From Malacoraja senta (lineage: Eukaryota): a DNA stretch of 64,000 nucleotides. A model generated the notes under the pieces. That model ran no database searches. It had not been told where the DNA came from and saw nothing but the letters and a program-made list of their open reading frames with translations. The stretch's first letter is position 1; the number at the start of each line of letters is the position of its first letter. This document shows, in pieces, positions 3,820-26,358 of this stretch. A program made the translations under genes and the position numbers. Location of the stretch: positions 279,000,001-279,064,000 of the forward strand of contig CM075977.1 in NCBI GenBank assembly GCA_038087875.1, given 5' to 3'.

Positions 3820-4100
3820 TCATAAGGTCAAGAGGTCATAAGGAATAGGAGTAGAATTAAGCCATTCGGCCCATCAAGTCTACTCCGCCATTCAATCGTG
3901 GCTGATCTATCGCTCCCTCCTAACCCCATTCTCCTCATAACCTCTGCCACCGTACTAATCAAGATTCTATCTATCACTGCCTTAAAAATATCCAGTGACT
4001 TGGCCTCCACAGCCTCTTGTGGCACAGAACTCCACAGATTCACCACACATTTCTCCTCATCTCCTTCCTAACAGAACGTCCTTTAGTTCTGAGTACATCC
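3820..4100 (-). mobile_element. CR1 LINE 3' fragment
   Basis: ORF 3828..4046 VNLWSSVPQEAVEAKSLDIFK; (atgacct)n tail. Confidence 0.85.
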
Positions 4101-4299
4101 TTCAAAGAGTACATTTCCGGCATTATTCAAGACGTTCTTCTCTTTGCCAGCCCCTCAGGGCCAAAAGTGATTTTAACCTCAACATGCATCACGTGGCAGA
4201 CGATTTTTGTATTATTTTCCTTCATTGCATTATTGAAAAAAATGAACATTAAATAGATAAGAAAGTAAGTAATCCATGCAAATCAGGGCAAGACTCGAA

Positions 4300-4450
4300 A
4301 AGAGAAGGAATGGATGACATTTCAGGTCGAGACCCTTCTTCAGACGTCACCCATTCCTTCTCTCCAGAGGTGCTGCCTGTCCTGCTGAGTTATTCCAGCA
4401 TTTTGAGTCTATCTTTGGTGTAAACCAGCATCTGCAGTTCCTTCCTATAC
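4300..4450. repeat. PLE pLTR fold-back (partial hairpin)
   Basis: gaaggaatggatgacatttc...cttcttcagac joined to gtcacccattccttctctccag...cagttccttcctatac. Confidence 0.8.
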
Positions 4451-4796
4451 AATACTCTTTTCATCATAGATATCTGTGAATATAACTACTTTTTAATAGA
4501 TCATCTTAGAATTTCCTTGCAAAGTTGTTACAGAACATAACAGAATATAACAATCTAACAAAGAAAAGACTATCCCTATTCCACACAAAATTCAGGATGA
4601 CATTATCCCGAATCATTATCCATTATCATTATGGATATTTTTAAGGCAGAGATAGATAGATTATTGATTAGTATAGGTGTCGGGGGTTATGGGGAGAAGG
4701 CAGGAGAATGGGGTTAGGAGGGAGATATAGGTCAGCCACGATTGAATGGCAGAGTAGACTTGATGGGCCGAATGGCCTAATTCTTCTGCTGCTGTC

Positions 4797-5498
4797 TCAT
4801 GGGGAGCCAGGACCAGTGCTCTTGTGCCGCTGAGTGCCACATGGTGCTGCAGCGCTCATACAAGCAAGCTAGACGCCATCCTCAACAACACCATGCGGAT
4901 CATCACCGGCTGCCTACACCCTACTCTGACGGATCTTCTGCCGGTGCTCGCAGGTATCGCCCCCACCAAGCTTCGCAGAGAGTACTTCACCCACAGGCTG
5001 GTGTGCAAGGCCCCATCGGATGCCAAACATCCTCTGCACCACCTCGCCCAGGACTCACAGCAACTGGGACCTCAACGCCTGGCATCTAGTCGCCCCTTCT
5101 CCCATCACGCAGCGACCCTCTGTGGCTCCGGTTTCAACACACTAGGAGCATGGAGAACCAGCTTGGAACAGACTTCACGACCTCCGCAATTCACTGTTGC
5201 ACCGAACACTACAGCCCCACCCGGCTCAGACATGCCCTGCAAAGAGTGGGTCGCCCAGAACCAGCTCCGTACAGGGGTCAGCCGGTTCAACGGCGACATG
5301 CATCGCTGGGCAGCCTGCGTGTGTGGAGCAGACCAGCAAACAGCGCAGCACGACATTTTCGACTGCGCTGTTCTCCGCCTCCCCCCCCCCCCGGTAGAGG
5401 GGTCGACCTCACGGCCCTCGACAACAGCACATTGAACTGGCTACAGCGCCTGGAGGGCGTTGCATAACCTCTGCTGCCTCAAACCCAAGAAGAAGAAG
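4797..5498 (+). mobile_element. Vingi/Ingi-clade non-LTR retrotransposon, 5'-truncated (RT C-terminus and CCHC zinc finger)
   Basis: ORF 4824..5435 WCCSAHTSKLDAILNNTMRIITGCL..LPVLAGIAP..LRTG..CVCG..QTAQH..DC; (GAA)n tail; inserted in a CR1 tail with duplicated gcctaa/ttctgctgctgtc. Confidence 0.75.
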
Positions 5499-5503
5499 CC
5501 TAA

Positions 5504-6169
5504 AGGGCCTGTCCCACACGTGTCCTTGGCACGCAAATTACGCGACCTCGTGGTCGCGTTGAGGCGCATGGGCATCGTATGGCCACGCGGGGCCGGTCCC
5601 ACTGAGAAGCGACATCGCGCGGGGCTCTGAAATTTTTGTAGGGAACGAAATCTTCGCGCGCCAACGGCCTGTCTGGTAACTGACGGCCAAAGTGGGACAG
5701 GCCCAAGACCCTGGCGTGACGCAACATCTCACCTCCAACAGCAGCAGAAGCAGGCAAACGATCGCCGAGCTCGGCCTGGGGCTCACGGCCGTTGCGGTCC
5801 GGATCTGCCCCCACTTCTACTCCCAGAACGGGGCCAAGAAAATTGAAGATAGACACAAAATGCTGGAGTAACTCAGCGGGACCGGCAGCATCTCTGGAGA
5901 GAAGCAATGGGTGACGTTTCGGGTCAAGACCCTTCTTTCAGACTGAAGAAGAGTCTCGACACGAAACGTCACCCATTGCTTCTCTCCAGAGATGCTGCCG
6001 GTCCCGCTGAGTTACTCCTGCATTTTGTGTCCATCTTCAAATGACACAGTGCTCCAGAGCTGTGCGGGAGAATGAAGTCGCGCGTGACCTTTGCGGGACC
6101 TTCGCACCTCAACACGACAACGAGGTCACGTAATGAGCGTGCCAAGGATACGTAAGTGGGACTGGGGCT
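5504..6169. mobile_element. PIF/Harbinger-like MITE with nested PLE hairpin
   Basis: agggcctgtcccac...aagtgggactggggct; ~65-bp imperfect TIRs; TAA/TTA flanks. Confidence 0.75.
5843..6040. repeat. PLE pLTR fold-back hairpin (~97-bp arms)
   Basis: ttgaagatagacacaaaatgctgg...tcagac then tgaagaagagtctcgac...ccatcttcaa; arms are near-exact reverse complements. Confidence 0.9.
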
Positions 6170-6809
6170 TTATTCTGCTGCTGTCACTTATAACATTATG
6201 ACATTGAACTCAAAACCTAATTCTGATCTGCAAATTATTCTCTTGCACAGCATGGAAAGGGATCAACATTATACAATCAACTCTCAATACAGGCTGACTT
6301 GTACCGTCCTTATTGTGATTTTCTATACTTTGATCAATATGTAGAAACAATGACACCGGATCAGGTGTGTTGGGGAAATGAGCTCAAAATATAAAGACAA
6401 GAAATCGACTGAAGATGGGTCTCGACCCGAAACGCCACCTATTTCCTTCATACCATAGATGCTGCCTCACCCGCTGAGTTTTTCCAGCATTTTTGTCTAC
6501 CCTGGTCTATAAATGTCTGTTTCAGTTTTAGATCACATCTGGTTTGTTTATTTGAGATTATCCATTTGATGGTACCTCAGATCAATATATATTAAACTAT
6601 GCAAGGTCCTACACCCAGTATTTTCGGCATTGTGTTTGACATATAGATAAATACATGACCTGTTTGAGCACATGTGCATCATTTTATATGCATCTGTGTG
6701 CCATCTGAGAAAACAGAATGGACACATCTGCCTGAAATGTCAGTGTCTCCCACTTATCGCTCTGCTTGGTGTTTTCATCCTGGAGCAGGAACCCATAAGA
6801 GCGTACACA

Positions 6810-6903
6810 AGAGTCTGAAGAAGGGTCTCGACCCGAAACGTCGCCTATTCGATCGCTCCATAGATGCTGCCTCACCCGCTGAGTTTTTCCAGCATTTTTG
6901 TCT
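6810..6903 (+). mobile_element. Short PLE pLTR insertion carrying a minimal hammerhead core
   Basis: CTGAAGA-A-GGGT(CTCG)ACCC-GAAAC-GTC at 6815-6842; flanking direct repeat acccataagagcgtacaca (6791-6809) / acccacaagtgcgtacaca (6904-6922). Confidence 0.8.
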
Positions 6904-7644
6904 ACCCACAAGTGCGTACACATTACTTGAAGACGAGGATGCAAAGAAAAGTTGAAACTACGCAAAGACATGAAATACATTATGTGACCGTAACCTCATG
7001 CTGACAGGGCACATCCAAAAACTGGCAGTATCAAAAGGTCATGTCACTTCTTTGCCCAAACTTGAAACAACGGGACTCAACTCAACAGAATTGGGCATAG
7101 GAGGCACAGGAGGAATAAAGGGCAGTGGATGTGAATCACTCTGAACAAGTCTTACAACCCATGAGTAAGGGAAGGATGCGAGACAGTAGCACAGTCTAAA
7201 TTCAGCCATATTGACATGAGCTCTTCAGTTAGAAGAGCTGAAGATTTTCTTCAGGACAATTTTATCATTTAAGATAGACACAAAATGCTGGGACAGCAAC
7301 TCAGCGGGACAGGCAGCATCTCTGGAGAGAAGGATTGGGTAACGTTTCGGGTCCAGACACTTCTTCAGAAGAGTGAAGTCTGAATGCTGAGTTACTCCAA
7401 CATTTTGCGTCTATCTTCGGTTTAAACCAACATCTGCAGTTCCTTCCTACACGATTCTATGACTTAATGGATTAGCTTAGTTGCGGCATCTTGGGGGCAT
7501 GGATCTGTTGGAATGAAGGGCCTGTTCCCGTGCTGTATGACTACATTTGGAGAGGCTCAGTGTTCCTACCCCAAATTATATACTTCAAGAATGTACTAAT
7601 ATATAAATGGTAGACAACCTGAAAATGCCCCTTTTCCTGCACAC

Positions 7645-7836
7645 CAACGAGCTGCAAGAGGAGGTAGTTGAGGCAGGTACTATCACAATGTTCAAGAAAC
7701 ATTTAGACAGGTACATGGATATCCAGGTTTGGAGGGATATGGACCAAATGCAGGCAACTGGGACAAATGTCGATGGGACATGTTGGCCGTTGTGGGCCAA
7801 AGGGCCTGTTTCCACACTGCAAGACTCTATGACTCT
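7645..7836 (+). mobile_element. CR1 LINE 3' fragment
   Basis: EEVVEAGTITMFKKHLDRYMD; gggcctgtttcc...(actctatg)n tail. Confidence 0.85.
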
Positions 7837-8257
7837 AACAATCCTGATACTGCTGCATAAAGGAAGGATGAACCAGGGTGGTGGAGAAAGGAACATCGGA
7901 AAGTATACAGGATCCGTAGGAGAGGCCTTGGCTATGTCCTTCCCGATGCCCCGTTGCAACAAGCTCACGTGATACTACCTGTTGTGGAGATGGGGGCAGT
8001 TCTAAGCAACATACCAAAGTCATAAAGCACGTGCATCATAGAGCAAATAGGCAAGGAGTGACTGGCAAAGGTAGACACAAGGTGCTGGAGCAACTCAGCA
8101 GGTCAGGCACAATTTCTGGAGAACATGGATACTGACCTTCTTGTAAAATGTTGTTCATTTCAGATTTCTAATATCCACAGTAGTTTTGCAATAAGGACTA
8201 CACGTCCATGGCCACAATATCAGCCATGAGGTGGTCATGAGTAATCTCTAGACTGAT

Positions 8258-8578
8258 TAGTTTAGTTTAGTTTAGTCTAGTGATACAGCGGGGAAACAGG
8301 CCCTTCGGCCCACTGAGTTGACGCCGAACAGCGATCCCCACACACTTACACAATCCTACACACACTAGGGACAATGTACATTTTTTATACCAAGCCAATT
8401 AACTTACAAACCTGCACGTCTTTGGAGTGTGGGAGGAAACAGAAGATCTCGGAGAAATACCATGCGGTCACGGGAAGAACGTACAAACTCCGTCCAGACA
8501 AGCACGCGCAGTCGGGATCGAACCCGGATTTCTGGTGCTGTAAGGCAGTAGCTCTACCGCTGTGCCACCGTGCTGCCC
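8258..8578 (-). mobile_element. HE1-like V-SINE
   Basis: Reverse complement of the 2677-2972 family, tRNA head through (taaac)n tail. Confidence 0.85.
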
Positions 8579-8899
8579 TTAATGGGGCAGAAATAGGGGT
8601 GCAATTATAGGAAGGAGAGATAGGGTGTGGGAATCATTGGATGAAAAGATTTGCACTTTTGCAAAACCCACTTTTGCAAAAAATAATCTATTGAGCTCCT
8701 TTCTCTTTGGATTGCAAACTGATATTGTGTGCAGCAACTGCAAAAGTGAGCTCCATGTAAATCATATTAGCCCAAGTTGCATATTGCTAGTGTGGCACAG
8801 TTTGTAATAAGCAGGTCCTGAGGCAATAAGCAGGTTGTACAGGGGGTGCAGGAGTAGAGAGAGACCTGGAGGAAGAGGTGCAAGGGGATGTGTGTGCAA

Positions 8900-9128
8900 G
8901 TCACAAGCTCACAAGTTATAGAAGTAGAATTCGGCCCTTCGGCCCATCGAGTCTATGCTGCCATTCAATCATGGCTGATCTCTACCTCCTAAGCCCATTT
9001 TCCTGCCTTCTCCCCAAAACTCTTGACACTCTTCTAATCTTCTAGAAAACAGGATATCTATCTCTGCTTTAAAAAATATCCACTGGCGGCCTCCACAGCC
9101 CTCTGTGGCAATGAGTTCCACAGATTAA
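8900..9128 (-). mobile_element. CR1 LINE 3' fragment
   Basis: gccattcaatcatggctgatc...cctccacagccctctgtggcaatgagttcc. Confidence 0.8.
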
Positions 9129-9250
9129 AGGGCCTGTCCCACTTGGCGATTTTTTTTGGCGACTGTCGGCATCATTGACTGACGTATCAGGTCACCGAAA
9201 AAGTCATAGCGTGATGCGGCGGTGACACGGCGTGATGACGTATTGACCCA
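9129..9250. mobile_element. Truncated Harbinger-like MITE (left end; same subfamily as 41320-41556)
   Basis: taa|agggcctgtcccacttggcgatttttttt...ggcatcattgactgacgtatcaggtcaccgaaaa. Confidence 0.75.
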
Positions 9251-9363
9251 CTCATTCCTGGAATCATTCTTGTGAACATTTTTGTAAGTAATTGAAAGTG
9301 CTGGGGCAGTTTGAGAAAGCAGTTACAACAGGCTCATGCAATTCTGAGCATTATAGAGGCATG

Positions 9364-9571
9364 AAAGGTAGACACAAAATGCTGGAGTAACTCAGCGGGA
9401 CAGGCAGCATCTCTGGAGAGAAGGAATGGGTGACGTTTCGGATCGAGACCTTTCTTCAGACGAAATGTGACCCATACCTTCTCTCCAGAGATGCTGCCTG
9501 TCCCGCTGTGTTACTCCAGCATTTGGTGTCTACCTTCGATTTAAACCAGCATCTACAGTTCTTTCCTACAC
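9364..9571. mobile_element. PLE pLTR hairpin insertion with 11-bp TSD
   Basis: TSD atagaggcatg at 9353-9363 and 9572-9582. Confidence 0.85.
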
Positions 9572-10298
9572 ATAGAGGCATGGAGAAGTGTCTGGGAAAT
9601 CTTGCTGAACCATTATGAAGTGTTATTCCAGCATGCTCTGGGCCAGCAGACTTTCTCAATGACTGGATGTTAATGTTTTAATGCCCCCACACGTTAATTT
9701 CTCTTTAAATGTTTCTCAGGAGAGGATTCTCTTGAACGTCTACAGGTGTAGAGAGCATACTGACTGGTTGCATCGTGGCCTGGTTCGGCAACTTGAACGA
9801 TCTACGGGTGCTGTTGGTACGGAGTTTGTACGCTCTCCCCGTGACTGCGTGAGTTCTCTCCGAGATCTTCGGTTTCCTCCCACACTCCGAAGACGTACAG
9901 GTTTGTAGATTAATTGGCTTGGTATGATTGTAAATCGTCCCTAGTGTGTGTAGGACAGTGTTAGCGTGCGGGGCTCGCTGGTCGGTGCTGACTCGGTGGG
10001 TAGAAGGGCCTGTTTCCTCGTTGTGTCTCTAAATTAAACACCACTGAAACACAGAGCGATAACCTGGGATGGCAGCAATTTCCCTGACATCATGGGATCT
10101 CAGGCTGACACCACAGTTAGTTTAGTTTAGTATAGTTTAGTGATACAGCATGGAACTTTGAAATTAAAACTTACAGAATAATGAAAGGCATAGATGGAAT
10201 GGATGTGGAGAGGATGTTTCCACTGTTGGGAGATTCTAGGACCAGAAAATTAAAGGGCGCTCTTTTAAAAAGGAGGAACTTCTTGAGTCAGAGGGTAA

Positions 10299-10947
10299 TT
10301 CCTGGGCGTGCATATCTCTGAAGATCTCTCCTGGTCCGAGAACACTGATGCAATTATAAAGTAAGCACATCAGCGCCTCTACTTCCTGAGAAGATTACGG
10401 AGAGTCGGTATGTCAAGAAGGACTCTCTCGAACTTCTACAGGTGCACAGTAGAGAGCATGCTGACCGGTTGCATCGTGGCTTGGTTTGGCAACTTAGGCG
10501 CCCAGGAGCGGAAAAGACTGCAAAAAGTTGTAAACATTGCCCAGTCCATCATCTGCTCTGACCTCCCTACCATCGAGGGATCTATCGCAGTCGCTGCCTC
10601 AAAAAGGCTGCCAGCATCATCAAGGACCCACACCATCCTGGCCACTCACTCATCTCCCGCTGCCTTCAGGTAGAAGGTACAGGAGCCTGAAATCTGCAAC
10701 ATCCAGGTTCAGGAATAGCTTTTTCCCCACAGACATCAGGCTATTAAACTCAACTGAAACAAAACTCTGAACATTAATAGCCCATTGCACTTTATCTGCT
10801 TATTTATGTGTGTATATATATATTCAATGGTATATGGTCACACTGATCTGTTCTGTATTCATGCCTACTATATTCTGTTGTGCTGAAGCAAAGCAAGAAT
10901 TTCATTGTCCTATCGGGGACACATGATAATAAACTCTCTTGAATCTT
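10299..10947 (+). mobile_element. Rex1/Babar LINE 3' fragment
   Basis: LSNFYRCTVESMLTGCIVAWFG...PSGRRYRSLKSATSRFRNSFFP; (cttga) tail. Confidence 0.85.
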
Positions 10948-12065
10948 GAAACAGGCCCTTCGGCCCACCAAGCCCACGATGACCACTGATCATCGTACAT
11001 TAGTTCTATCTTATCCCAGTTTTGCATGCTACACATTAGGGGAAATTTTCAGAAGCCAATTAACCTCCAAACCTGCAAGTCTTTGGCATGTATGGGGAAA
11101 CCAGAGCACCCAGAGTACACCCACACAGTCACAAGAAGTCAAGAATCAAGAGTGTTATATTGCCATGTATCCCAGACAGAACAATAACATTCTTACTAGC
11201 AGCGGCACAATAGAATACTACACAACAAACAGAGAGGGAGAACCTGGGGAAAACCCACACAGTCACAGGGAGAACCTACTAACTCCTTTAGACACTACCC
11301 CGTAGTCAAGATTGAACCCAGGTCTCTGGCACTGTAAGGCAACAACTCTACCGCTGCGTCACCATGCCACCAGTGTTATCTAAACAAGAAACAAAAACAG
11401 AAAATGCTAGGAGTAATCAGCAAATTAGGCACCATCTGTGCATAAGAAATATTTAATATTTCAAGTCCATGATAGAACTGGTCAAAATGACCTCTCCTTC
11501 AATTCTCCCTTAATAAAAATGTGATCTAAATAAACCCTGTAGTAAAACTCTTAAGTTCTTGTAGTTTATTCCTAGATATAACAACCCATGCTTTAAGCGT
11601 TAATGTTTTCTGTAACAGAATATGACAGTTAAATGAAGGGGATCTTTTTTCAAATTTCCACTGCTTACTGCTATTTACCTTTTGGGAAGTACTTTGTTCT
11701 ATCTTTAGATCTAAAGCACACAATCTCCTATCTGCCGCACTTAAATCCATTTACTACACTTTGCCCACTTTTGATTCATGTTTAATCTTTTATGCATCAT
11801 TCCTAACTGTCATTGTAATGTCATGTTGTCACTTCCGGGCGGAGCACCAAGGCAAATTCCTTGTATGTGAATACTTGGCCAATAACCTTATTCATTCATT
11901 CATTTGTTCTACTTACAAATATATCCTTGTCGTTTAATGCTTACATTCACATTGCTTACAAAAGCGCAAATACTAGTTCTTGAATTTTGCATTTGACAAT
12001 TTTATTATCCTTTTCACTCAATATAATTAGGTTTAATTCCTCCAAAAGAGTAAGTATTGTAGTGC

Positions 12066-12256
12066 TTAAGAAGGAACTGCAGACGCTGGAACAATCGAAG
12101 GTAGACAAAAATGCTGGAGAAACTCAGCGGGTGAGGCAGCATCTATGGAGCGGAGGAATGGGTGACGTTTCGGGTCTCGACCCGAAACGTCACCCATTCC
12201 TTCGCTCCATAGATGCTGCCTCACCCGCTGAGTTTCTCTAGCATTTTTGTCGACCC
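12066..12256. mobile_element. PLE pLTR hairpin insertion with 13-bp TSD
   Basis: Arms 12104-12175 and 12180-12251 around loop CTCG; TSD agtattgtagtgc at 12053-12065 and 12257-12269. Confidence 0.9.
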
Positions 12257-12989
12257 AGTATTGTAGTGCAATTATTTCCATATCAAAGTACATGAATTAA
12301 TCAGAAGTACAATTTAAACATATTGTAATACAGAAAATGAGCAAAAATGAAATGTAACTGTCAATTCATTCACAAGAGCATTTAAAAGGAACATATGATT
12401 TTTAAGAATAATCACAGATGTTTTACATTAGTGATATTGCTCATAATTGTCTTCTAAAGTAAAAGGGTAGAGTGTTTCATACAGCAATGAAATATTGATT
12501 TTGACTTCCACACCATTAACCAAAGCCTTTTCCAGTGTTTTTTTCTACTGAGTGAAATATACTGCACTTTTAAAGCACTAAAGAAAGGGTCATTTGATAT
12601 CAAGGATCACATATTTGTTCACAAAAGAAAAACAGAGCTGTGTGTTATTGATAATTGGATTAACCTAGAGCTATACGGTGTACACTCTTGGGTGCACAGT
12701 GTCTATCAGGGGTTATGGGGAGAAGGCAGGAGAATGGGGTCAGGAGGGAGAGATACATCAGCCATGATTGGATGACGGAGTAGACTTGATGGGCCGAATG
12801 GCCTAATTCTGCTCTTATCACTTATGACCTTATGAACTTTTGTCTCCTCAATTATTGGCAAGAACATTATGCTCAGCACTTATTTTTCTCAGGAACTTAA
12901 CCTAGTAACATTAACAGGAGTGCAACGTGAAAAGTTCATCTGCAGTGAGACTTGTGTGAAAAAAGTTATCATCTAGTCACTGATCATTA

Positions 12990-13480
12990 AGGACAGGAGA
13001 GGTGTGCATGTGAAGCCAGAGGAAGGAATATAGGTGGAAGTGGGTGAGGGGGGAGGGAGTGAGGAGGGGGGGGGGTGGAAGGGGAAAGGGAGAAATAGAT
13101 GCGCATCCAGGTTGTGTGTAGGGAAGAGAGGGGGTAAAAGGAGGGGGCAGTGAAGTGGTGGTGCTGTTTGTAGGTTAGTCATCTAAAATTGGAGAATTCA
13201 GTGTTCATTCTGTTCGATCATAAGCTACCCAAGTGGAATACAAGGAATACAAGGCATCTGGCGTCACTTGCCAGGAGATTTAGCAGTCTTTGGCAAACAG
13301 TCGGACACTTGGTCTTTCCGCTACAAAGGACGCCAGATCCGGAGCTCCAAGAGCAGTAGTTTGAGGTTGGAGAATGTGCATGTGAACCGCATCTCACCTG
13401 GAAGGGTTGCTGGGGTCTCTGGATGCATGCGATGGGAGGAGGTGCAGGCACAGGTGATACATCTCCTGTGGTTGCAGACT
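12990..13480 (-). mobile_element. Old, degraded Penelope-like element
   Basis: ORF 13218..13451 contains QPFQVR and GKTK remnants homologous to the GIY-YIG region at 56693-57007. Confidence 0.65.
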
Positions 13481-14560
13481 GGACGTACAGCTATGTAGGT
13501 AAATTGGCTTGGTAAATGTAAATATATATATATATTTTAAATTGTCCCTAGTGGGTATAGAATAGTGTTAATGTGTGCGGGGATCGCTGGTCTGCGCGGA
13601 CCTGCTGGGCCGAAATGGCCTGTTTCCGCGCTGTATCTCCAAACTAAAAACTAAACTAAAAGAATATGTGGGGAGGGGGGAAGATTTTGTGGGAAGGGAT
13701 GAGTCAACCAAGGATTAGCAGAGGGAGCAGTTTCTTCAGACATCGGAAAGGGCTGGGGGTGGGAAGATGCGACTGGTGGTGGGATCACATTGAAGATGGC
13801 TGAAACAGTCTGAAGAAGGAAGGATCCTAACCCAAAGTGGCGCCTATCCAAGTTCTCCAGAGATGCGGGGTGTCACTTGCATTGTAATAATCCCATTTTA
13901 GAATGGACCGTGAAGATCGCAGTTGCAACAGACTCAGAACTAAGTTTATGTTGCAAATTCACAGGGCACTTAATTCAACAAGATGGACGCAAAAAACTGG
14001 CGTAACTCAATTGGACAGGCAGCAACTCTGGAGAGAAGGAATGGGTGACGTTTCGGGTCGAGACCCTTCTTCAGACTTAATTGAACAAGGTCGGTTACAG
14101 TGCACAAGGAAACCTGCTTGATCTACATGGTGATATTTGAAAATGAAGATGTCGTCTTTTATTCAGCTTTCACAAATAGCGTTAGAGTAGCCAATAATGC
14201 TGTTATAATTGCGAAAAAGGACCTGGAGCAATTTCTAGGTCAATACATTTTACGGGGCCATTGAACTTAGGCTGTCCACCTAGTTTAGTTTTGTTTATGG
14301 TGACGTGTACCGAGGTACAGTGAAAAGCATTTGTTGCGTGCTAACCATTCAGCAGAAAGGCATCCATACAGGAGCAAATGAAAATCATTTCAAAAAATGC
14401 AAAGGCCATTTGAAATCCTCCCAACATGTTTGCAAAGCTACAAAGCTGAGATAAATGTATGAACAACTGAAAAAGCAGCTGGCTGAATTCAGAATCAGTA
14501 CCCCGTGCCTGCCTTCTCCCCATATCCCTTGATTGCATTAGCCCTAAGGGCTATATCTAA

Positions 14561-16328: not shown

Positions 16329-16967
16329 TGATGGTAAGAAATAGGAAATAGGATGAATGAAAACCAAAATGTTTCAGATACTGGAAATATCATGGCTGGG
16401 TGATTTGCAGTAGAAATGGCCAGTTCTGATATGTCAGACAAAGCGAATCAGTTGAACGTGTGGATTTCAATATCGAGTTCGGAAGGCTGCAAAGTGGAGC
16501 TGTTTGAAATTGGAAAGGATGATTCCTGAATGCAGAGGTGGGAAGTGCGGAACTGGGGAATTTCTTTGCTCTGTCCAGGATGAGGAGCTGAAAGTAGAGG
16601 TGCAGGAAATGAAGAAATTGCAATCTATCATTTTAGATGATTCCCATAAGTCTATCAAGTATGGTTGAGAAAAACGGAAAATACTTCAGAGATGAGATAT
16701 TAGTGATCTGCTCTGAACCCTTTCCAGTTTGACAACATCTTTCCTGTAACATGGTGACCAAAGCTGAACACAATAAGGGTTTCGGCCCGAAACGTTGCCT
16801 ATTTCCTTCGCTCCATAGATGCTGCCTCACCCGCTGAGTTTCTCCAGCATTTTTGTGTACCTTCGATTTTCCACCATCTGCAGTTCCTTCTTAAACACAA
16901 TATTCTAAATGTGGCCTCACCAATGTCGTATACAACTGTAACATGACCTCCCAACATCTACACTCAA

Positions 16968-17191
16968 TGTGTAGGGAGGAACTGCAGATGCTGGTTTACA
17001 CCGTAGACTCAAAAAGCTGGAGTAACTCAGCGAGACAGGCAGCATCTCTGGACAGAAGGAGTGGGTGACATTTCAGGTCGAGACCCGAAACCGAGACCTG
17101 AAGATAGGTGTCGACCCAAAACGTCACCTGTTCCTTCTCGCCAGAGATGCTGCCTGTCCCGCTGAGTTCCTCCAGCATTTTGTGTCTATCT
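16968..17191. mobile_element. PLE pLTR hairpin insertion with ~11-bp TSD
   Basis: tctacactcaa at 16957-16967 and 17192-17202. Confidence 0.85.
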
Positions 17192-17597
17192 TCTACACTC
17201 AACACTGAAGCTTTGGCCATATTGGCCTTCATCAGTCACAGGTATTGAGTAGAGATGTTGGCAGGTCATGTTACAGTTAAAACTACCATTGTGGTGAAGA
17301 GTTTCCAATTTTGTTTCTTTACTTTTCAAACCATCTTGCAGTCTGACTCACATTCAGATATCCTGTAGACATCAGAACTTTCTGCTTTCCATCTGCCTCT
17401 TCTGAAAATCACAAACACATCCCCACTGTCTGCCCGTTCTAGGTCATTTCCATGACTTTTAAATTTGTGATGCCACAGTCTGAATACGAGGTATGGGGCA
17501 AACATTAATAAATCCACATTTACCCTGATAGCTCTCATCGGATCTTTAGAGCTTTCAAATAGGAGCAGTCGTGCAATATAGATCAGATGGCACTGGA

Positions 17598-17895
17598 GAG
17601 TCATAGAGTGATACAGTGTGGAGACAGGCCCTTTGGCCCAACTTGCCCACACCGGCGGCCAGCATGTCCCAGCTACACTAGTCCCACCTGCCAGCATTTG
17701 GTCCATATCCCTCCAAACCTGTCCTATCCATGTACCTGTCTAACTGCTTCTTAAATGATGGGATAGTCCCAGCCACAACTACCTCCTTTGGCAGCTTGTT
17801 CCATACACCCACCACCATCTGTGTGAAAAAGTTACCCGTCAGATTCCTATTAAATCTTTTCCCCTTCACCTTAAACCTATGTCCTCTGGTCCTCA
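17598..17895 (-). mobile_element. CR1 LINE 3' fragment
   Basis: ORF 17678..17896 RTRGHRFKVKGKRFNRNLTGNFFTQ..WNKLP..FKKQLDRYMD. Confidence 0.9.
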
Positions 17896-18058
17896 AAGTT
17901 GAACGTTGGTTCTCTTATTGGGGTAATTAGGTTGTTGGTACATTCACTATACATGGGCCAGACATCTAGTATCTTCAAAAGGCAATGAAGTAATTTCTAC
18001 CTTTCACATGCTCAAGGTGATTAAGTTTAAGTTTGTGATGCCACATTGATTAAGGTAA

Positions 18059-18559
18059 AGGGGCTGACCCACTTGGGCGACCTAATTGGCGAGTTTAGAA
18101 GAGTTTGAAAAAATGACATGTTGAAGACCTCCTTCGACTATGTTGAAGATCAGCTTCGACTATCTATGACTAACTTCGGGAAAATTGGACACCGAATATT
18201 GGAGAGTGAAGACGTTCTTCTTCGACCTCCCTTCGACTATGATGAAGACTATCTACGACTACCTTCGACTACCCTCGATTACCTACGACTAACATGTCGA
18301 CCTACTACAACTAAACCTACGAGTAAAAAAAGTATTGATTTTTTTCCATGGCGACCTTTTTTTACTCGCGGGCATTATTTAACATATTGAAAAAAACATC
18401 GCGACCTAGCTGAGGCCTCGAGTACACGGAGACCACTCTCGAGCATGAAGGAGAGTTACGAAGACCTCCAACGACCTCGCGTCGACCATGCTGCGAGTAT
18501 GAGTCGAGGGCAAACTCGCCAGAACTCGCGGATTAGGTCGCCCAAGTGGGACAGGCCCT
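18059..18559. mobile_element. PIF/Harbinger-like MITE, 501 bp, TAA TSD
   Basis: taa|aggggctgacccacttgggcgacctaat...attaggtcgcccaagtgggacaggccct|taa; internal cgact/cgacct motif array. Confidence 0.9.
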
Positions 18560-19537
18560 TAACACCAAGTGTATTGCAAGTTGTATTATTGTGGATGGAA
18601 GTTCTACTCTTGATGCAAAGTGTGGAGGCCAAATGTCAGGAAGCTGAGGAAAAACACAAATAGTACATGCAGAGAAATAGAAAGAAGTACAACATGTTAA
18701 TGAAGGCACTGAATTTACATATGTTTTGTAAGATAATGTAAAGAAATTGGGCTATATTTTGACATCTTCACTGGATATCCAAAAAAAGGGAATGTGAGTG
18801 GGAATTGGTAGGCAGAGCACATTATCCACTTGATGTGAAAGTCATAAGACTCGAGCTATTATGAAACTCTGGTCCTGTCTCCATGGTGTTATTAAGTTGG
18901 GTGGCCAAAGCGATATTCTCAGAGTTAATTAACAGTTCAAATCTGGAAAAGGGAGTGTCATATGGGTAGAACTATGGTTGGAGTGCTTGCTGTAAATGTT
19001 GGTCATCCAGGGTGGCAGAGGGGAAAGCCTATCCTTGCAGTTTGACGAAAAACAATTAGCTCAGTAAAGAGTCGGATTGTGTGGAAACAGGCCCTATTTT
19101 TAAAAATTAATGTTTAATGTTTTATGTATCATTCTTAACTGTCACTGTATGTCATGTTGTCACTTGCGGACGGAGCACCAAGGCAAATTCCTTGTATGTG
19201 AATACTTGGCCAATAAACTTATTCAATTCAATTCAATTCAATTCAATCAATTTTAAGCTTGCAGAGCCAAACACAGCAGTGTTCATCTGGACATCTCTTA
19301 ATACCGACACTAAACATAACTAATAACAGTGCATGTTACAATAATGTACCAAAAAGTTAGAACACATTGCACACTAATGTCTTAAAGATGCATTTGTACT
19401 TGTAGATACCACAGAGCTGGCAGCTTAGCAAAAAATGTATTTATATGAAACAGTTCTATTTGGAATGCACTGTCACAGAGATCACGGGACATTTTTGGAG
19501 AAAATTGGATAAACATTTCAAAGCATTTCTTAAGGAT

Positions 19538-19812
19538 GACACAGTGGCATTGCAGTAGAGTTGCTGCCTTACAGCGCCAGTGACCCGGGTTCAATCCTGA
19601 CTACGGGTGCTGTCTATGTGGAGTTTGCACGTTCTCCTTGTGACCGCATGGGTTTCCTCCAGGTGCTCTGGTTTCCTCTCACATCCCAAAGACGTGCAGG
19701 CTTGTAGGTTAATTGGCTTCTGTAAATTGTCCCTGGTGTGTAGGACACTGGTCGGTGCGGACCCGGTGGGCCGAAGGACCCTGTTTCCACACTGTATCTC
19801 TAAAAGAAACTA
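19538..19812 (+). mobile_element. HE1-like V-SINE (diverged)
   Basis: Degenerate A/B boxes, V-domain and tail. Confidence 0.8.
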
Positions 19813-20289
19813 ATTTGAAGCTGTAGGAATACTGGATTTTCTCAAGCATATGTCCACTACAGACTAATGAATTGAGCAGATCTCTGCTGTATGCAACATT
19901 TTGGTTTGGAAAAATCCTGGAAAATTAAAATTTTAAGATTCATAAAAAGGACTTTAGTCTAGGAATTGACTAATATCATTAGCAGCCTTTCAGCAACAAA
20001 TTGAAACCAAGTATGGTCCAAGTGGTTGCGGGAAAACCCATCATAAGCCACACTCCCGAGAACATACTAGAAACACGCAGGCGACAAAATATTGTAAATG
20101 CCAATTTAAATTCCCTTTCTGCATGGGAAAATTAATTGTATGCTGCACCGAAGATGATCTACTTCTATTGATGCTAGAAGATTGTATTACTGTCTCTGGC
20201 AGATAATGATACAATAGGGAATTTAACTCTGTTATTGTGCTGAGCTTAAACATGGCTCGAGACCAAGTTTCAATACATTGATTACATAT

Positions 20290-21240
20290 GACAAAGGAAG
20301 TGCATGCAAGCTTGACGAACCTGAAATAATACGAGCACCTTAACAAATACAGAGAAGTAGGAAAGAAACTAAACAAGGGATCAGGAGCACTAAAGGGGGC
20401 ATGAATTGTCCATGGCAAATACAATTAAAGAGTAATTTTAGATGTGCAGGATGGTAGCTAGGGAAGGGATAGGTCCACTCAAGGACAAAGGAGATCATTT
20501 ATATGTGAAGTCAGAGGAAGTAGGTGAGGTCCTTAAATCCAGGTTGCATCAGTATTCACCAAGGGGAAGGGCATGGATGATGGTGAGTTTAGGGAGAGGT
20601 AGGTCCATAAATCCATAAGTGATCGGAGCAGGATTAGGCCATTTGGCCCATCAAGTCTACTCCGCCATTCAATCATGGCTGATCTATCTTTCCCTCTCAA
20701 CCCCATTCTCCTGCCTTCTCCCCATAACACCGTGACATCCGTACTGATCAACTAAATGTTGTTATCAATGAGTCGTTGAGTGTCTTGAGAGACGTAAAAG
20801 TGGATAATACCCCAGGGCTGATTGAATCTATCCCAGGATACCGAGTGAAGCAACATAGAGATTGCTAGGGGCTTGATAGAGATCTTTGTAGTTTCTTTAA
20901 CACGTACAAGATGCTGGGAGATAGAATAGCCATTGGTGTACAAGAAATGATAGGCTGGTGGGCCTTACATCAGTAGAAGGGATAAGATTCTTAGTGATAG
21001 GATGTACTGATACATCTGAAAAAGCATGGGCCTATCGGAGAAAGTCATCATTGCTTTGTGTGGAGGAGATCTTGTCTCACAAATTGATTGGTTTCTTGAG
21101 AATTTGATAAAGATGACTGAGGGTAGGACAGTGAATGTTGTCTATATTGACCAAAGTAAAGCATTTAACAGGGTCCCTCATGTCCCAGAGGATTAAGTCA
21201 CTTGGGATACACAGTGAGTTGGTAAATTGAATCCACAGAT
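20290..21240 (+). mobile_element. Old CR1 ORF2 internal fragment with a nested minus-strand CR1 tail (~20600-20750)
   Basis: Degenerate RIGPLKD / FASVFT / SCLTNL / KAFxxVPH coding remnants. Confidence 0.7.
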
Positions 21241-21747
21241 CGACACAACATGCTGGAGTAACAGGGCGGGACAGGCAGCATCTCTGGAGAGAAGGAATGG
21301 GTGACGTTTCGGGTCAAGACCATTCTTCAGACTAGAAACGTCTTCCATTCCTTCTCTTCAGAGATGCTGATGGGTTACTCCAGCATTTGGTGCCTTTCTA
21401 GAGAATGGGATGCAGGCAGCTGAAATGTAGGCAACCCTATGTGGAGGGAATCTCTGGAAACTGGGAGTGCATCTCTGGATAGAAGGAACGTGTGACGTTT
21501 CAGGTCGAGAGCCTTCTTCAGACGCCTCGACTCGAAACGGTCACATTTCTTGGTTCTGTCAAGGGTGATTGAACATACTCATGTGGTGGTCTGAAATTAA
21601 AATCACTCGGGGGGGGGGGGGGGGACGGGGGCGGGGAACTGAAGGGAGGAACTGGCTGCAAGAGACTGAAGAGTTGCGAGTCACATTGCTGTGGGTCTGC
21701 AGTCACATATAAGGCAGAGGGAATAAAGAACAGACATCTTCCTATGG

Positions 21748-22056
21748 ATTATTATTATTAAATCGTTGAAAACATTAGCGACGCAGTGATGCTGGTTTCT
21801 GATGGGCACGGTGCCTTACGATGCTGTGTACGACAGTGATCGCAACTCCTACTGAAGTGTGGATGGCCGTTGGCTCACTAGGAGCTCATCCGCCCTTTGA
21901 CAGGTCTTGTTGTTGGTCCTGCTGGGGGTCCACAGCCCCCTCTTTACCTGGCAAACCAGGTGGGGGAGACGGTTTAGTTGCCGACTATCCGGCCATGGAG
22001 CAGGTAGCGCGGGATTACATGGTACCCGTGGCGGGGGGGACTCCCCCACGACCTGG
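21748..22056 (-). mobile_element. ~310-bp GC-rich SINE-like retroposon with (TAA)n tail, no Pol III boxes seen
   Basis: Sharp composition shift; (att)n at 21748-21760; flanking ctatg at 21742-21746 and 22057-22061. Confidence 0.55.
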
Positions 22057-22369
22057 CTATGTTAACACTTACGCTTCTCAAGTAGTTAATCTAAAAGTGT
22101 CTTTGATGATCTATTTCTACATGGAATTTTGGGAATGAAGAAACATTGGGGATTATCTTGGGGCGGTGCAACACTTATTTTCCAGGCACGATCCTGCTCA
22201 AGGCTCTGATGTGCAGATATTAGGGAACATCACTCTATGACTCTATAACATGGGGAGGTAAGATCATGTTCACATTTATATCAAGTGTATTACTTGCATA
22301 TGTAGTAATGAAAAGATGCTTTGTTCATCCGTGCCTGAAGAAGGCAACTTGGTATTCATAGGTCTCAAA

Positions 22370-22905
22370 GGTCTTTTACTGTCACGTGTACCAATTAATA
22401 TATAATGATATGCAAATTACCGTACAGCCATACGAAAAAAAAAGCAACAAGACACACAACTACATAAAAGTTAACATAAACATCCACCACAGCGGATTCC
22501 CCACATTCCTCACATTCTGACCAGAGACCGCCAGCTCTGTGACGTTAAGTCCGCAAGCACCCATGGTTGGAGCTCCGAGGTCGATCCCTGGCAAAGGGAT
22601 GGTGGACTCCGCGATGTTAAAGTCCCGTAGGCTCCCCGCGGTGGAGCTCTCAAAAGTCGGTCTCCAGCAGAGGCCGCCAACTCCTCGATGTTAGGCCGCA
22701 GTGCGGACGGAGATACGATACGGGAAAAAAAATCGCATCTCCGTCGAGGTAAGAGATTTTAAAACGTTTCCCCCAACCCCCCCCCCCCCCCACATAAAAC
22801 AAGCTAAAGAACACTAAAAACATACATTTAACACATAGTATTAAAACACAAAGAAGGAAGGGACAGACAGACTGTTGGCGAGGCAGCCATTGCTGGCACC
22901 ACCGG
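22370..22905 (-). mobile_element. GC-rich non-autonomous non-LTR element with Rex1/L2-like tail
   Basis: Tail ggtacacgtgacagtaaaagacc and body related to 32995-33395. Confidence 0.55.
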
Positions 22906-23092
22906 ATGAAACACAGGTCCTAATACCTATTTTTGATCCTGTACCAAACCAAGTTACCTCTGAACACCAATCCTAAACATCATGTAAATAAAATCCACAA
23001 GCATTGTCCCCAATCATTACTGCTTCTGCTCCTCAGGTCATAAGATCTCCCACTCTAGAGCACAACTATTCCAACCAAAACAAATCTTTCAA

Positions 23093-23820
23093 AGGTCGAC
23101 ACAAAATGCTGGAGTAACTCAGTGGGTCAGGCAGTATCTCTCGAGAAAAGGAATGGTGACGTTTTCGGATCAAGTCCTTTCTTCAGACTGAGAGTCAGGG
23201 GAGAGGGAAAATAGAGGTATGAAAAGGTACAGAATATATCAGTCGGCACTGATGACCCAGGGCCAACAATAGTCCATTGTTGGCCGTGGAGGAGATGATA
23301 ATGAAGCGATATGAACAGTGAAATTAGTAGGTAGACACAAAATACTGGAGAAACTCAGCAGGTCAGGCAGCATCTATGGAGAGAAGGAATTGGCGACGTT
23401 ACAGGTTGAGACCCTTCTTCTGAAATTAGTAGGACTAAGGCGGGGGGACAGGGGGACGGGGAGAGAGGGAACGCAAGGGTTACTTGAAATTAAGATATTA
23501 ATATTCATACCACTGAGGTGTAAGCTGCCCACGCGGAATATGAAGCGCTGTTCTACAATTTTTGTGTGGCCACAATCTGACAGTGGAGGAGGCCCAGGAT
23601 ACAAAGATCAGTGTGAGAATGGAAAGACGAGTTATAATATTTGGCAATCGGGAGATCACGTGGGCCAAAGTGGACTGAGTGTAGGTGTTCAGCGAAATGA
23701 TTGCCCAGACTGCTTTTGGTCTCGCCGATATACAAGAGTCCACATCGAGACCAACACGTATACAGTGTACAGTAGATGAGGTTGGAGGAGGTGCAAGTGA
23801 ACCTCTGCCTCACCTGAAAG
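23093..23820 (-). mobile_element. Penelope-like element 3' part with a nested pLTR fragment (23332-23420)
   Basis: ORF 23553..23813 FTCTSSNLIYC..LLYIGETK..FAEH; nested insert has TSD tgaaattagtagg at 23319-23331 and 23421-23433. Confidence 0.85.
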
Positions 23821-25157
23821 CCAAATATTCAGTGCACTTCGACTTAAAAGTGTTTTTCAGCAGAGGTATAATCCTCGGGTGCTTACTTACTATGGAGATT
23901 AAATGATCTGAACTAAAAGCTTTATTCCAGAAAAATATCATTATTTTAAACCCTATAAAAGAAAGGTTACAAGAACAATGGTGTGCAGTGCTGAGGAATA
24001 AATGGTTTCAGAATCACATTTTAAATCAAAGTTATGCTAGTGAGTGTGGATTAGACTCATCGTCTCAAGCGAAGATGAATATTGGCAGCGTCTCAGCTGA
24101 AATCACTTTCCAGGGAAGCAAAAAGGATGTAAATTGGCAGTCGAAAGATTGTTATAAAAATTAAAATATAATGGTGACATTCAATACTAAGGAAACCCCC
24201 AACATGCTGAAATCAGTGGAAAAGACAGATGGTCTTGCTGTAGTTTCCCATATGGTCTGTTCCCTTCTGGGCCAGTTGGAGGAAGTGCGGACTGAATGAG
24301 GGGGGAAATACGTGAAGAAAAAGAGGAATAATGTCTAGAATTGAATTTGTATCCAGTCCAAGGACACTATTTTCCCTCACCTCCATCAACGCGACATGAC
24401 AGTGTAAAAGAATGAAATTACTCCAGATGAAAACAAGTTTCGATATAAGTGCAGAATTTTATATATAATCTATTTTGGCTTTTTACAATTGGCATTTTGT
24501 GTTGCTTTTATAATTATCTGCGTGAAAACGCTGCGCATGTCCGAAAAATGATCAATTTAATTTAAAATGCTTTCTGCCATCGCTGCACCAATTTCACAGC
24601 ACCCTGAAGCAGAACGTTTCTCACAGGAACAGATTGTACTCGAGAGACATTCATTCACCAGAAGCAGGCAGTAGGTCACGGGTCCCAGCTGGTGATGGGG
24701 CCGTCGCTGGTGCAAGGCCCCCACTGTCGGGGTGGGTGAGGATTTCAGAGCGCTACTGGTCCTGTCAATTCAGTGTTAGCAATCCCTGGCTCAGCAACTC
24801 ATCAAACCCCCCCCCCCCCCCCCCACACACAACTTTATATGACCATCTGTTTCAGCTGCACAAATGTCAGTGAAATAGTCATTGGATACAGAAAGCGACG
24901 TTGCATCTGTTCTTTTAAATGTACTTTCATACTGTCATTACTAATAATATAAGAGAGAGTTAATAGATAGAGCTCTTGGGGCTAACGGAATCAAGGGATA
25001 TGGGGAGAAAGCAAGAACGGGGGACTGATTCCGGATGATCAGCTGACTCGAAGGGCCGAATGGCCTACTCCTGCACCTATTTTTTCGATGTTTCAAAGAG
25101 AAAGAGTAACTAACTGAAAGCAGTGCTATAAAGCAGATGGAATTCAAAGTTAACAAT

Positions 25158-25484
25158 GGGTGGCACGGTGGCGCAGCGGTAGAGTTGCTGCCTTACAGCG
25201 CTTGTAGCGCCGGAGACACGGGTTCGATCCCGACTACGGGTGCTGTCTGTATGGAGTTCTCCCCGTGACCTGCGTGGGTTTTCTCTGAGATCTTCGGTTT
25301 CCTCCCACAACCCAAAGACATACAGGTTTGTCTTTTTGCCTTGTAGGTTAATTGCCTTGGTATAAGTGTAAATTGTCCCTGGGGTGTGTAGGATAGTGTT
25401 AATGTGCGGGGATCGCTGTTCGGTGCGGACTCGGTGGGCGGAAGGGCCTGTTTCCGCGCTGTATCTCTAAACTAAACTAAACTA
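25158..25484 (+). mobile_element. HE1-like V-SINE
   Basis: A box tggcgcagcgg, B box gggttcgatcc, (taaac)n tail. Confidence 0.9.
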
Positions 25485-25629
25485 AGCTCCCCCCATCTCC
25501 TCTTTCCCATTCCATACCAAACTTCCTGTCCTTGGAAAACTGGAAGAACAACACCTCATATTCCGCTTGGGTAGTTTACAACCTAACAGTATAGACACTG
25601 AATTCTCAATTTCAATTAAGACCACGTTT

Positions 25630-26358
25630 ATTTGAGTGTTTGTCGGCACTGGGCCTGTACTCGCTGGAGTTTAGAAGAATGAGGGGGGACCTCATTGAAA
25701 TATACGGGATAGTGAAAGGCTTGGATAGAGTGGATGTGGAGAGGATGTTTCCACTAGTGGGAGAGTTTAGAACTAGAGGTCATAGCCTCAGAATTAAAGG
25801 ACGTTCCTTTAAGAAGATGAGGAGGGTGACGTCTGAACAAGGGTCCTATTCCTTCTCCTTTATAAAAGAGTATTGCCCTGATTTGCATGGATTACTTACT
25901 TTCTTATCTATTTAATGTTCATTTCTTTCAATAATGCAATGAAGGAAAATAATACAAAAATCATCTGCCACGTGATGCATGTTGAGGTTAAAATCACTTT
26001 TGCCCAGAGGGGCTGGCAAAGAGAAGAATGTCTTGAATAATCCTGGAAATGTACTCTTTGAAGGACATAATCAGAATTAAAAGACGTTCTTTTAGGAAGG
26101 AGATGAGGAGAAATGTCTTATTCAGAGGGTGGTGAATCTGTGGAATTCTTTGTCACAGAAGGCTGTAGAGGCCAAGTCAGTGGATATTTTTAAGCCAGAG
26201 ATAGATAGATTCTTGATTAGTACCTGTGTCATGGTTTATGGGGAGAAGGCAGGAGAATGAGGTTCAGAGGGAGAGATAGATCAGCCATGTTTGAATGGCG
26301 GAGTAGACCTGATGGGCCGAATGGCCTAATTCTACAATTCCTTATGACCTTATGACCA
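25630..26358 (+). mobile_element. CR1 3' fragment interrupted at ~25824-26067 by a duplicated block
   Basis: LGLYSLEFRRMRGDLIE..RTRGHSLRIKG; the ~40-bp CR1 segment tcagaattaaa...agatgaggag occurs on both sides of the insert. Confidence 0.8.

What the first reader, a model, noticed from the sequence alone, without database searches (positions are those of the whole stretch)
4050..26116. Second, inverted duplication 21.5 kb apart that also begins at a pLTR hairpin apex
Seen: 4050-4352 is the reverse complement of 25824-26116, with a near-identical ~190-bp non-repeat core (about 4108-4292 vs 25870-26066). The 25.8-kb copy starts with gggtgacgtctgaa, the exact apex junction of the hairpin at 4339-4352. 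It runs in PLE-sense direction through the unique DNA into the donor's CR1 piece. It sits inside another CR1 whose ~40-bp segment (tcagaattaaa...agatgaggag) now appears on both sides. Inference: the 5' boundary is set by the ribozyme/apex and the 3' boundary by CR1 homology (homology-primed cDNA insertion). This independently repeats the polarity of the 17/29-kb event.
Basis: partly seen in the sequence, partly recalled or inferred. Interest (0 to 1): 0.72.

Follow-up and report, generated by a model that had tools for sequence, protein, structure and literature searches.

The report
Repair patch copied from neighbouring repeat's flank
About 290 bases next to one jumping-gene relic in a skate genome were copied, inverted, into a similar relic 21.5 kb away; this most likely records a DNA break mended by a known repair route, so it is a tidy but ordinary repair scar.

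Summary
Window 4047-4352 is the reverse complement of 25824-26116, with 5.9% substitutions overall and 3.5% in the roughly 200-bp unique core. The core has only two copies in the window. In contigs of three related organisms it sits at single-copy-like depth, while the flanking repeats reach 10^5-10^7. It is therefore not a dispersed composite repeat.

The 25.8-kb copy is the derived one. It interrupts a LINE 3' fragment and duplicates about 40 bp of it. One junction lies inside LINE homology: the first ~50 bp are donor-type, then the sequence switches to the recipient's own LINE. The other junction is a 2-nt microhomology (GG), 5-7 nt into the far arm of the donor's fold-back element.

The copy does not start at the predicted hammerhead cleavage site, which lies about 36 nt inside the tract. 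There is no target-site duplication and no co-copied LINE tail.

Best reading (about 0.55): a break in the recipient LINE was repaired from the nearby homologous LINE. Copying ran into that LINE's flank, stopped in the fold-back stem, and the end was joined. An RNA/cDNA template is not excluded (about 0.2).

The scan has already noted the same kind of repeat-primed repair patch elsewhere in this genome (s1-172325, s1-178030). Interest is low to moderate.

The parts
3818..4046 (-). Rest of the 5'-truncated LINE 3' fragment at the donor locus, including its short tandem tail. It is not part of the copied tract.
   Evidence: It aligns with other LINE copies. It shares no derived states with the B LINE, and divergence is 15.6%. 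The tail is at 3818-3843. A has a private 12-nt deletion at the 4046/4047 boundary.
4047..4093 (-). First ~47 nt of the donor LINE fragment. This is the homology arm copied into B, and it contains 4053-4092, the segment duplicated at B.
   Evidence: Derived states are shared with B 26066-26116.
4094..4296 (-). Unique, low-copy core: host DNA lying between the LINE and the fold-back element at the donor.
   Evidence: There are two copies in the window. Depth is single-copy-like in contigs of three related organisms.
4297..4345 (-). Short arm of the fold-back repeat. It carries a hammerhead-like core at 4316-4343, with the near stem strand at 4301-4318 and the loop at 4319-4345.
   Evidence: Repeat-family alignment. 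An 18-19-bp stem in the DNA fold. Motif coordinates. No Rfam hammerhead match.
4346..4470 (+). Long arm of the same fold-back repeat. Only its first 5-7 nt (4346-4352) are in the copied tract, and the arm is continuous across that boundary.
   Evidence: The intact arm at A against only 7 nt at B shows that A, or an A-like locus, is the source.
25620..25825 (+). Recipient LINE, part 1. It ends in the left copy of the duplicated segment (25788-25824). Positions 25824-25825 (GG) are junction microhomology.
   Evidence: It is 88% identical to another LINE copy at 46248-46440 (I3).
25824..25861 (+). Copied piece of the donor fold-back: 7 nt of the far arm, the junction and the short arm. It has a 17-nt gap that removes the predicted cleavage site.
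25862..26065 (+). Copy of the unique core. Positions 25862-25866 are 5 nt extra relative to A.
   Evidence: Letters of the B form are seen in contigs of two related organisms.
26066..26116 (+). Donor-type LINE tract. It includes the right copy of the duplicated segment at 26071-26110.
   Evidence: It shares derived AAATGT and two 2-nt deletions with A, and it keeps 3 nt that 25788-25824 lacks.
26117..26357 (+). Recipient LINE, part 2, running to its own tail (26340-26357).
   Evidence: No derived states shared with A.

Best explanation
This is a one-off scar of DNA-templated break repair. A LINE 3' fragment at 25.6-26.4 kb broke near 25824. The right-hand end invaded the homologous, oppositely oriented LINE fragment 21.5 kb away at 3.8-4.1 kb. 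Repair synthesis ran off that LINE's truncated 5' end, through 203 bp of unique flank and the short arm and loop of the neighbouring fold-back element. It stopped 5-7 nt into the far arm of the 18-bp stem. The new strand was released and joined to the other broken end through a 2-nt GG microhomology. This is strand invasion and synthesis completed by end joining; a replication template switch would give the same product. The result is a ~290-bp inverted patch plus a ~40-bp duplication of LINE sequence. Shown: the two-copy status, the direction (A-like donor to B), both junction types and the position of the donor-to-recipient switch. Inferred: that the template was DNA, the order of steps, and that the stem caused the stop.
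For: The core is low copy: two copies in the window and depth of about 5-50 in contigs of three related organisms, against 10^5-10^7 for the flanking repeats. B interrupts an otherwise continuous LINE and duplicates 25788-25824 at 26071-26110. The right duplicate is donor-type rather than a copy of the left one. Divergence jumps from 5.9% in the tract to 15.6% beyond 26116. The left junction has a 2-nt microhomology. At A the fold-back arm is continuous across the tract end, whereas B holds only 7 nt of it. No target-site duplication and no co-copied LINE tail are present. The two copies lie 21.5 kb apart in cis. The tract end lies in an 18-19-bp stem.
Against: Sequence alone cannot tell a DNA template from an RNA template. 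No reads of the source individual were available, so neither the assembly of the B junction nor the genome-wide copy number in this species was checked directly. The runs laid were relatives at about 91% identity, and only as contigs. The proximity argument suffers from ascertainment within a 64-kb window. That the stem caused termination rests on one event. About 14 fold-back junctions occur per 64 kb, so a random breakpoint falls within 10 nt of one about 0.4% of the time and inside the repeat family about 6% of the time.
Confidence: 0.55

Rival explanations
1. RNA-templated version. A LINE-sense transcript of the A locus annealed by its LINE part to a broken or nicked B LINE. It was then reverse-transcribed up to its 5' end, or to a stall in the fold-back stem, and the cDNA was joined to the other end.
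For: It gives the same product: one homology junction in the LINE and one microhomology junction. The genome is full of reverse-transcriptase-bearing elements; a LINE ORF tail in the window resembles RT-family proteins (a lead only). Penelope-like elements are reported to retropose host sequences in trans (PMC8557442). B's 17-nt gap spans the predicted cleavage site, which could fit a template jump across a cleaved RNA.
Against: The 5' end is not at the predicted cleavage site, and no start signal is known there. There is no poly(A), tail or target-site duplication. The LINE 3' part at B is not donor-type. The two copies lying 21.5 kb apart is unexpected for a diffusible RNA. The 17-nt gap may simply be a later deletion in a hairpin-prone stretch.
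Confidence: 0.2
2. Reverse-transcriptase template switching during the original retrotransposition of the B LINE. The cDNA started on the LINE's own RNA, switched by homology to an A-locus transcript, copied it up to the fold-back, and switched back with 2-nt microhomology.
For: The product would be the same, and template switching by LINE reverse transcriptases is known (own knowledge: chimeric retrocopies such as U6-L1).
Against: It requires two switches and an A-locus transcript. It does not explain the proximity in cis. The A/B tract divergence (3.5-5.9%) is lower than the B LINE's distance to its nearest relatives (12-17%), which hints that the patch is younger than the LINE. That comparison is weak, however.
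Confidence: 0.07
3. Both blocks are members of a dispersed composite repeat family (fold-back piece + core + LINE) with many copies.
For: Both flanks are very abundant repeats.
Against: Core depth in contigs of three related organisms is about 5-50, against 10^5-10^7 for the flanks, with one or two contigs per run. The window holds only two copies.
Confidence: 0.03
4. Assembly artefact: a chimeric join placed a second copy in the LINE.
For: Fold-back structures of Penelope-like elements are known to trouble assemblies (PMC8557442).
Against: The copies differ by 17 substitutions and three indels, many of them independent CpG decay, so they are not a duplicated read. B-form letters (26031 T, 26042 C) occur in contigs of two other organisms.
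Confidence: 0.02

Closest known systems
Coupled homologous and non-homologous double-strand-break repair: one-ended invasion, or synthesis-dependent strand annealing finished by end joining (own knowledge: Belmaaza and Chartrand 1994; Richardson and Jasin 2000; reviews found, e.g. PMC7407515)
   Same: One junction lies inside homology and the other has 0-few nt of microhomology. Donor flank beyond the homology is copied, the donor is unchanged, and a short duplication of recipient sequence results.
   Different: This is a natural germline event between dispersed LINE relics that are only about 85% alike. The non-homologous junction lies in a fold-back stem. The template molecule (DNA or RNA) was not shown.
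Microhomology-mediated break-induced replication / fork stalling and template switching (own knowledge)
   Same: A short inverted templated insertion copied from a site tens of kb away in cis, with a return junction showing 2-nt microhomology.
   Different: One of the two switches here uses about 50 bp or more of repeat homology rather than microhomology.
Retroposition of flanking host sequence (LINE 3' transduction; host sequences retroposed in trans by Penelope-like elements, PMC8557442)
   Same: Unique host DNA next to a retroelement is copied elsewhere, running in the element's sense direction.
   Different: There is no target-site duplication, no element 3' end or tail copied along, no 5' end at a transcript or ribozyme boundary, and the copy lies near its donor.
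Fold-back (inverted pseudo-LTR) insertions of Penelope-like elements and their non-autonomous hammerhead-bearing derivatives (PMC8557442; bioRxiv 10.64898/2026.07.22.740005)
   Same: The donor's neighbour is such a fold-back: a sense arm starting near the predicted cleavage site and an inverted arm holding the CUGANGA...GAAA core.
   Different: In this event the fold-back is only a bystander that marks where copying ended. The event is not an insertion of the element.

Membership tests
Repeat-primed ectopic repair patch (strand invasion plus end joining) | The recipient is an interrupted repeat homologous to a repeat adjoining the donor segment | tested here: met
   LINE parts 25620-25824 and 26066-26357 flank the insert, and the donor adjoins a LINE at 3818-4093.
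Repeat-primed ectopic repair patch (strand invasion plus end joining) | One junction lies inside the homology, with a switch from donor-type to recipient-type sequence | tested here: met
   Derived states are shared up to 26116 and none beyond; divergence is 5.9% against 15.6%, p = 0.0035.
Repeat-primed ectopic repair patch (strand invasion plus end joining) | The other junction is non-homologous with little or no microhomology | tested here: met
   A 2-nt GG overlap at 25824-25825.
Repeat-primed ectopic repair patch (strand invasion plus end joining) | The template was DNA | not testable with these tools
   There are only indirect arguments: proximity in cis and the absence of retroposition marks.
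Retroposed copy (LINE- or Penelope-like-mediated transduction, cDNA insertion) | A target-site duplication of unrelated target DNA flanks the insert | tested here: not met
   The flanking duplicate is LINE sequence whose right copy is donor-type, not a copy of the left one.
Retroposed copy (LINE- or Penelope-like-mediated transduction, cDNA insertion) | The mobilising element's 3' end or tail is copied along | tested here: not met
   The LINE beyond 26116 is not donor-type, and the tails differ.
Retroposed copy (LINE- or Penelope-like-mediated transduction, cDNA insertion) | The 5' end lies at a transcript start or ribozyme cleavage site | tested here: not met
   The predicted cleavage site at 4316/4315 lies about 36 nt inside the tract, which ends at 4350-4352.
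Dispersed composite repeat family | Many copies genome-wide with the same flanks | tested here: not met
   Core depth is about 5-50 against 10^5-10^7 in the flanks, with one or two contigs per run in three related organisms. The source species itself was not available.
Hammerhead ribozyme (minimal, Penelope-like type) | CUGANGA box, stem II, GAAA, cleavage triplet and a matching covariance model | tested here: inconclusive
   The boxes are readable at 4316-4343 on the minus strand. Rfam gives no hammerhead match at the gathering score or at E up to 10. The palindromic ACGT of the family reads ATGT in this copy. Cleavage was not tested.
CR1-clade LINE | Reverse transcriptase falling in the CR1 clade | not tested
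Six ORFs, including a LINE tail ORF, have no Pfam match. The atlas gives only reverse-transcriptase and jockey-like leads.

The most novel reading that the evidence does not exclude
The hammerhead-bearing fold-back elements, of which about 14 have arm-to-arm junctions in these 64 kb, may act as recurrent stop or entry points for templated repair synthesis, whether DNA- or RNA-templated. If so, they would shape where local micro-duplications begin and end across this skate genome.
Probability: 0.12. Interest if true: 0.5.

Novelty: new member of a known kind. Interest (0 to 1): 0.22.

Why it matters
This is a clean natural example of dispersed repeats priming break repair that carries neighbouring unique DNA to a new place. 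That is one way small segmental duplications arise in repeat-rich vertebrate genomes. It also corrects a more exotic reading: neither ribozyme cleavage nor a cDNA is needed to explain it. Its only slightly unusual feature is that the non-homologous end falls in a fold-back stem. That feature would matter only if a genome-wide census showed it to be a pattern.

Tried and rejected
- Rfam at gathering scores over the whole window, and at E up to 10 over 4200-4520, gave no hammerhead or other credible family.
The atlas look-up gave only reverse-transcriptase leads.
- I considered that A might be a 5'-truncated retrocopy of a B-like LINE carrying the insert. I rejected this because the LINE beyond the first ~50 bp is not shared, and because A's fold-back arm is continuous where B has only 7 nt.
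- I considered that the ~40-bp flanking duplicate might be a target-site duplication. I rejected this because the right copy keeps 3 nt that the left copy lacks and carries donor-specific states.
- I considered a third partial copy at 36.6 kb. It is only another fold-back with the same short arm.
- The pair 11774-11905 / 19106-19238 is an ordinary SINE-like repeat.
- I tried to decide from the relatives' contigs which locus they are orthologous to. The tables give mixed A-form and B-form letters, many at CpG sites, and I could not resolve it.
- The source species' own reads were not among the runs offered; the best holder had only 0.33 of the sampled words.
Full report
**What is there**

Reading both loci and aligning them shows that window 4047-4352 is the reverse complement of 25824-26116.

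- The central ~200 bp (4094-4296 against 25868-26065) match at 96% by BLAST (E = 4e-90).
- That core has no third copy in the window.
- Over the whole tract there are 17 substitutions in 287 aligned positions and three indels.
- Several differences are independent CpG decay. At 25963, 26029 and 26044, B has lost a CpG that A keeps. At 26066/26067 one ancestral CpG seems to have decayed on opposite strands in the two copies.
- The copies are therefore old and distinct, not a duplicated read.

**Anatomy**

I describe both loci in the sense of the LINE, which is the minus strand at A and the plus strand at B.

Locus A reads, in order:
- the long arm of a fold-back repeat (4470 down to 4346);
- the short arm, with a hammerhead-like core (4345 down to 4297; core boxes at 4343-4316);
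- 203 bp of unique DNA;
- a 5'-truncated LINE 3' fragment running to its short tandem tail (4093 down to 3818).

The fold-back forms an 18-19-bp stem (4301-4318 with 4346-4363) around a 27-nt loop.

Locus B reads, in order:
- LINE part 1 (about 25620-25824);
- 7 nt of the far arm, then the junction and the short arm, with a 17-nt gap;
- the core;
- LINE part 2 (26066-26357) running to its own tail.

A LINE segment of about 40 bp occurs on both sides of the insert, at 25788-25824 and 26071-26110.

**Which copy is derived**

B is the derived copy. It interrupts a LINE that is otherwise continuous. It carries only 7 nt of a fold-back arm that at A is intact for more than 100 nt and matches the repeat family across the boundary. 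At A the arrangement is what two ordinary insertions into unique DNA would leave. Another fold-back at 36.6 kb has the same short-arm form.

**The LINE-side junction**

This evidence comes from an alignment with other LINE copies of the window.

- A and the first ~50 bp of B's part 2 share derived states that the family lacks: AAATGT where the family has GGAA-TTT, and two 2-nt deletions.
- B's left duplicate (25788-25824) lacks 3 nt that the right duplicate and A both keep. Another LINE copy, at 44 kb, shares that 3-nt gap. The right duplicate is therefore donor-type and not a target-site duplication.
- Beyond 26116 there are no shared derived states.
- A has a private 12-nt deletion and a 10-nt deletion.
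- Divergence beyond 26116 is 15.6% (19/122), against 5.9% in the tract and 3.5% in the core (p = 0.0035 and 0.0002).
- Over this stretch B's LINE is closer to four other copies (83-86%) than to A's (81.7%).

**The other junction**

B reads GAGGA-GGG-TGAC at the junction. The LINE family would continue GAGGA-GG-AA, and the donor reads AAT-GGG-TGAC. The join therefore has a 2-nt GG microhomology at 25824-25825. In donor coordinates the tract ends at 4350-4352, which is 5-7 nt into the far strand of the stem, after the whole loop.

The predicted hammerhead cleavage site (after GTC, between 4316 and 4315) lies about 36 nt inside the tract, so it did not define the end. B's 17-nt gap happens to remove that site. 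I cannot tell whether the gap arose during the event or later. Rfam finds no hammerhead here even at E up to 10, so I call the motif hammerhead-like on the strength of its readable boxes only.

**Copy number**

The best holder had 0.33 of the sampled words. I laid contigs of four runs from three related organisms on 25300-26700.

- Summed contig depth over the core bins was about 10, 5, 0-25 and 29-50. Over the LINE and fold-back flanks it was 10^5-10^7.
- One or two contigs per run cover the core.
- A 258-nt contig (organism A) and a 318-nt contig (organism C) cross the core/LINE junction at about 91% identity.
- The organism C contig lacks A's 12-nt deletion.
- Organism A's contig carries mostly A-form letters.
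- Organisms B and C also show short pieces with B-form letters (26031 T, 26042 C), which suggests the B copy exists in them too.

The tables do not let me assign orthology, and contigs cannot prove absence.

**Mechanism**

The product has one junction in about 50 bp or more of repeat homology and one junction with 2-nt microhomology. Donor flank was copied beyond the homology, the donor is unchanged, and recipient sequence is duplicated. This is the known outcome of one-ended strand invasion with synthesis, finished by end joining, or equally of a replication template switch (own knowledge; reviews).

I favour a DNA template for these reasons:
- The two copies lie 21.5 kb apart in cis.
- There are no retroposition marks.
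- The LINE 3' end did not travel with the patch.

An RNA template primed on the LINE homology, or reverse-transcriptase template switching during LINE insertion, would give the same sequence and cannot be excluded. Penelope-like elements are reported to retropose host sequences in trans (PMC8557442).

That the stem caused copying to stop is an inference from a single event. By chance, a breakpoint falls within 10 nt of one of the ~14 fold-back junctions about 0.4% of the time, and within this repeat family about 6% of the time.

**The companion event**

Aligning it and profiling identity gives a different picture.

- The first 46 nt of the repeat, which hold the hammerhead core, are only 76% alike. 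This is the background level for this family.
- The next 52 nt are 94% alike, and the 360 bp of unique DNA that follow are 89-94% alike.

The true boundary there is thus again a homology junction inside a dispersed repeat, not a start at the ribozyme core. What the two events share is repeat-primed copying of a neighbour's flank, not ribozyme-defined ends.

**Relation to earlier notes**

After I had formed this reading (recorded), a word search of the scan's notes showed two followed-up cases in this same genome read the same way. In one, a MITE was patched from a sister copy 35 kb away, with 442 bp of its flank copied (s1-172325). In the other, a SINE was patched from a copy 12.5 kb away (s1-178030). 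These are AI notes and not independent proof. They do suggest that the kind of event is recurrent here and already recognised by the scan.

**Verdict**

- It is a new example of a known repair scar.
- Interest is low to moderate.

Noticed in passing
window 17095-17555 vs 29131-29622: In the companion direct duplication (85% overall), the first 46 nt of the repeat, holding the hammerhead core, are only 76% alike, while the next 52 nt are 94% alike. Its boundary therefore looks like a homology junction inside the repeat rather than a start at the ribozyme core.
   Followed up: partly
window 4344, 9461, 21335, 32880 (starts of sense arms): In several fold-back elements the sense arm begins at family position 24-28, next to the predicted hammerhead cleavage site. 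The inverted arm carries the whole core. This looks like cDNA of a self-cleaved RNA joined to an inverted copy.
   Followed up: partly
window 36649-36816: A second fold-back has the same short inverted arm (family positions 5-47), preceded by AAAAG, as the one at 4297-4345. This suggests a recurrent truncation point or tail.
   Followed up: partly
window 25846 (gap relative to 4314-4330): The B copy lacks 17 nt running from the stem II loop to 2 nt past the predicted cleavage site. It could be a later deletion in a hairpin-prone stretch or a trace of a template jump. This is unresolved.
   Followed up: no
window 25963, 26029, 26044, 26066-26067: At the four CpG sites that differ between the copies, B has lost all four and A only one. 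The decay is uneven between two copies of the same sequence.
   Followed up: no
window 11774-11905 and 19106-19238: A 132-bp pair at 91% identity is the body and tail of a SINE-like repeat ending in a short ATTC-type tandem. It is ordinary.
   Followed up: yes
window 10297-10949 and 42506-43130: A 650-bp direct pair at 84% identity has mostly two copies in the window. It is probably a moderately repeated element and was not examined.
   Followed up: no
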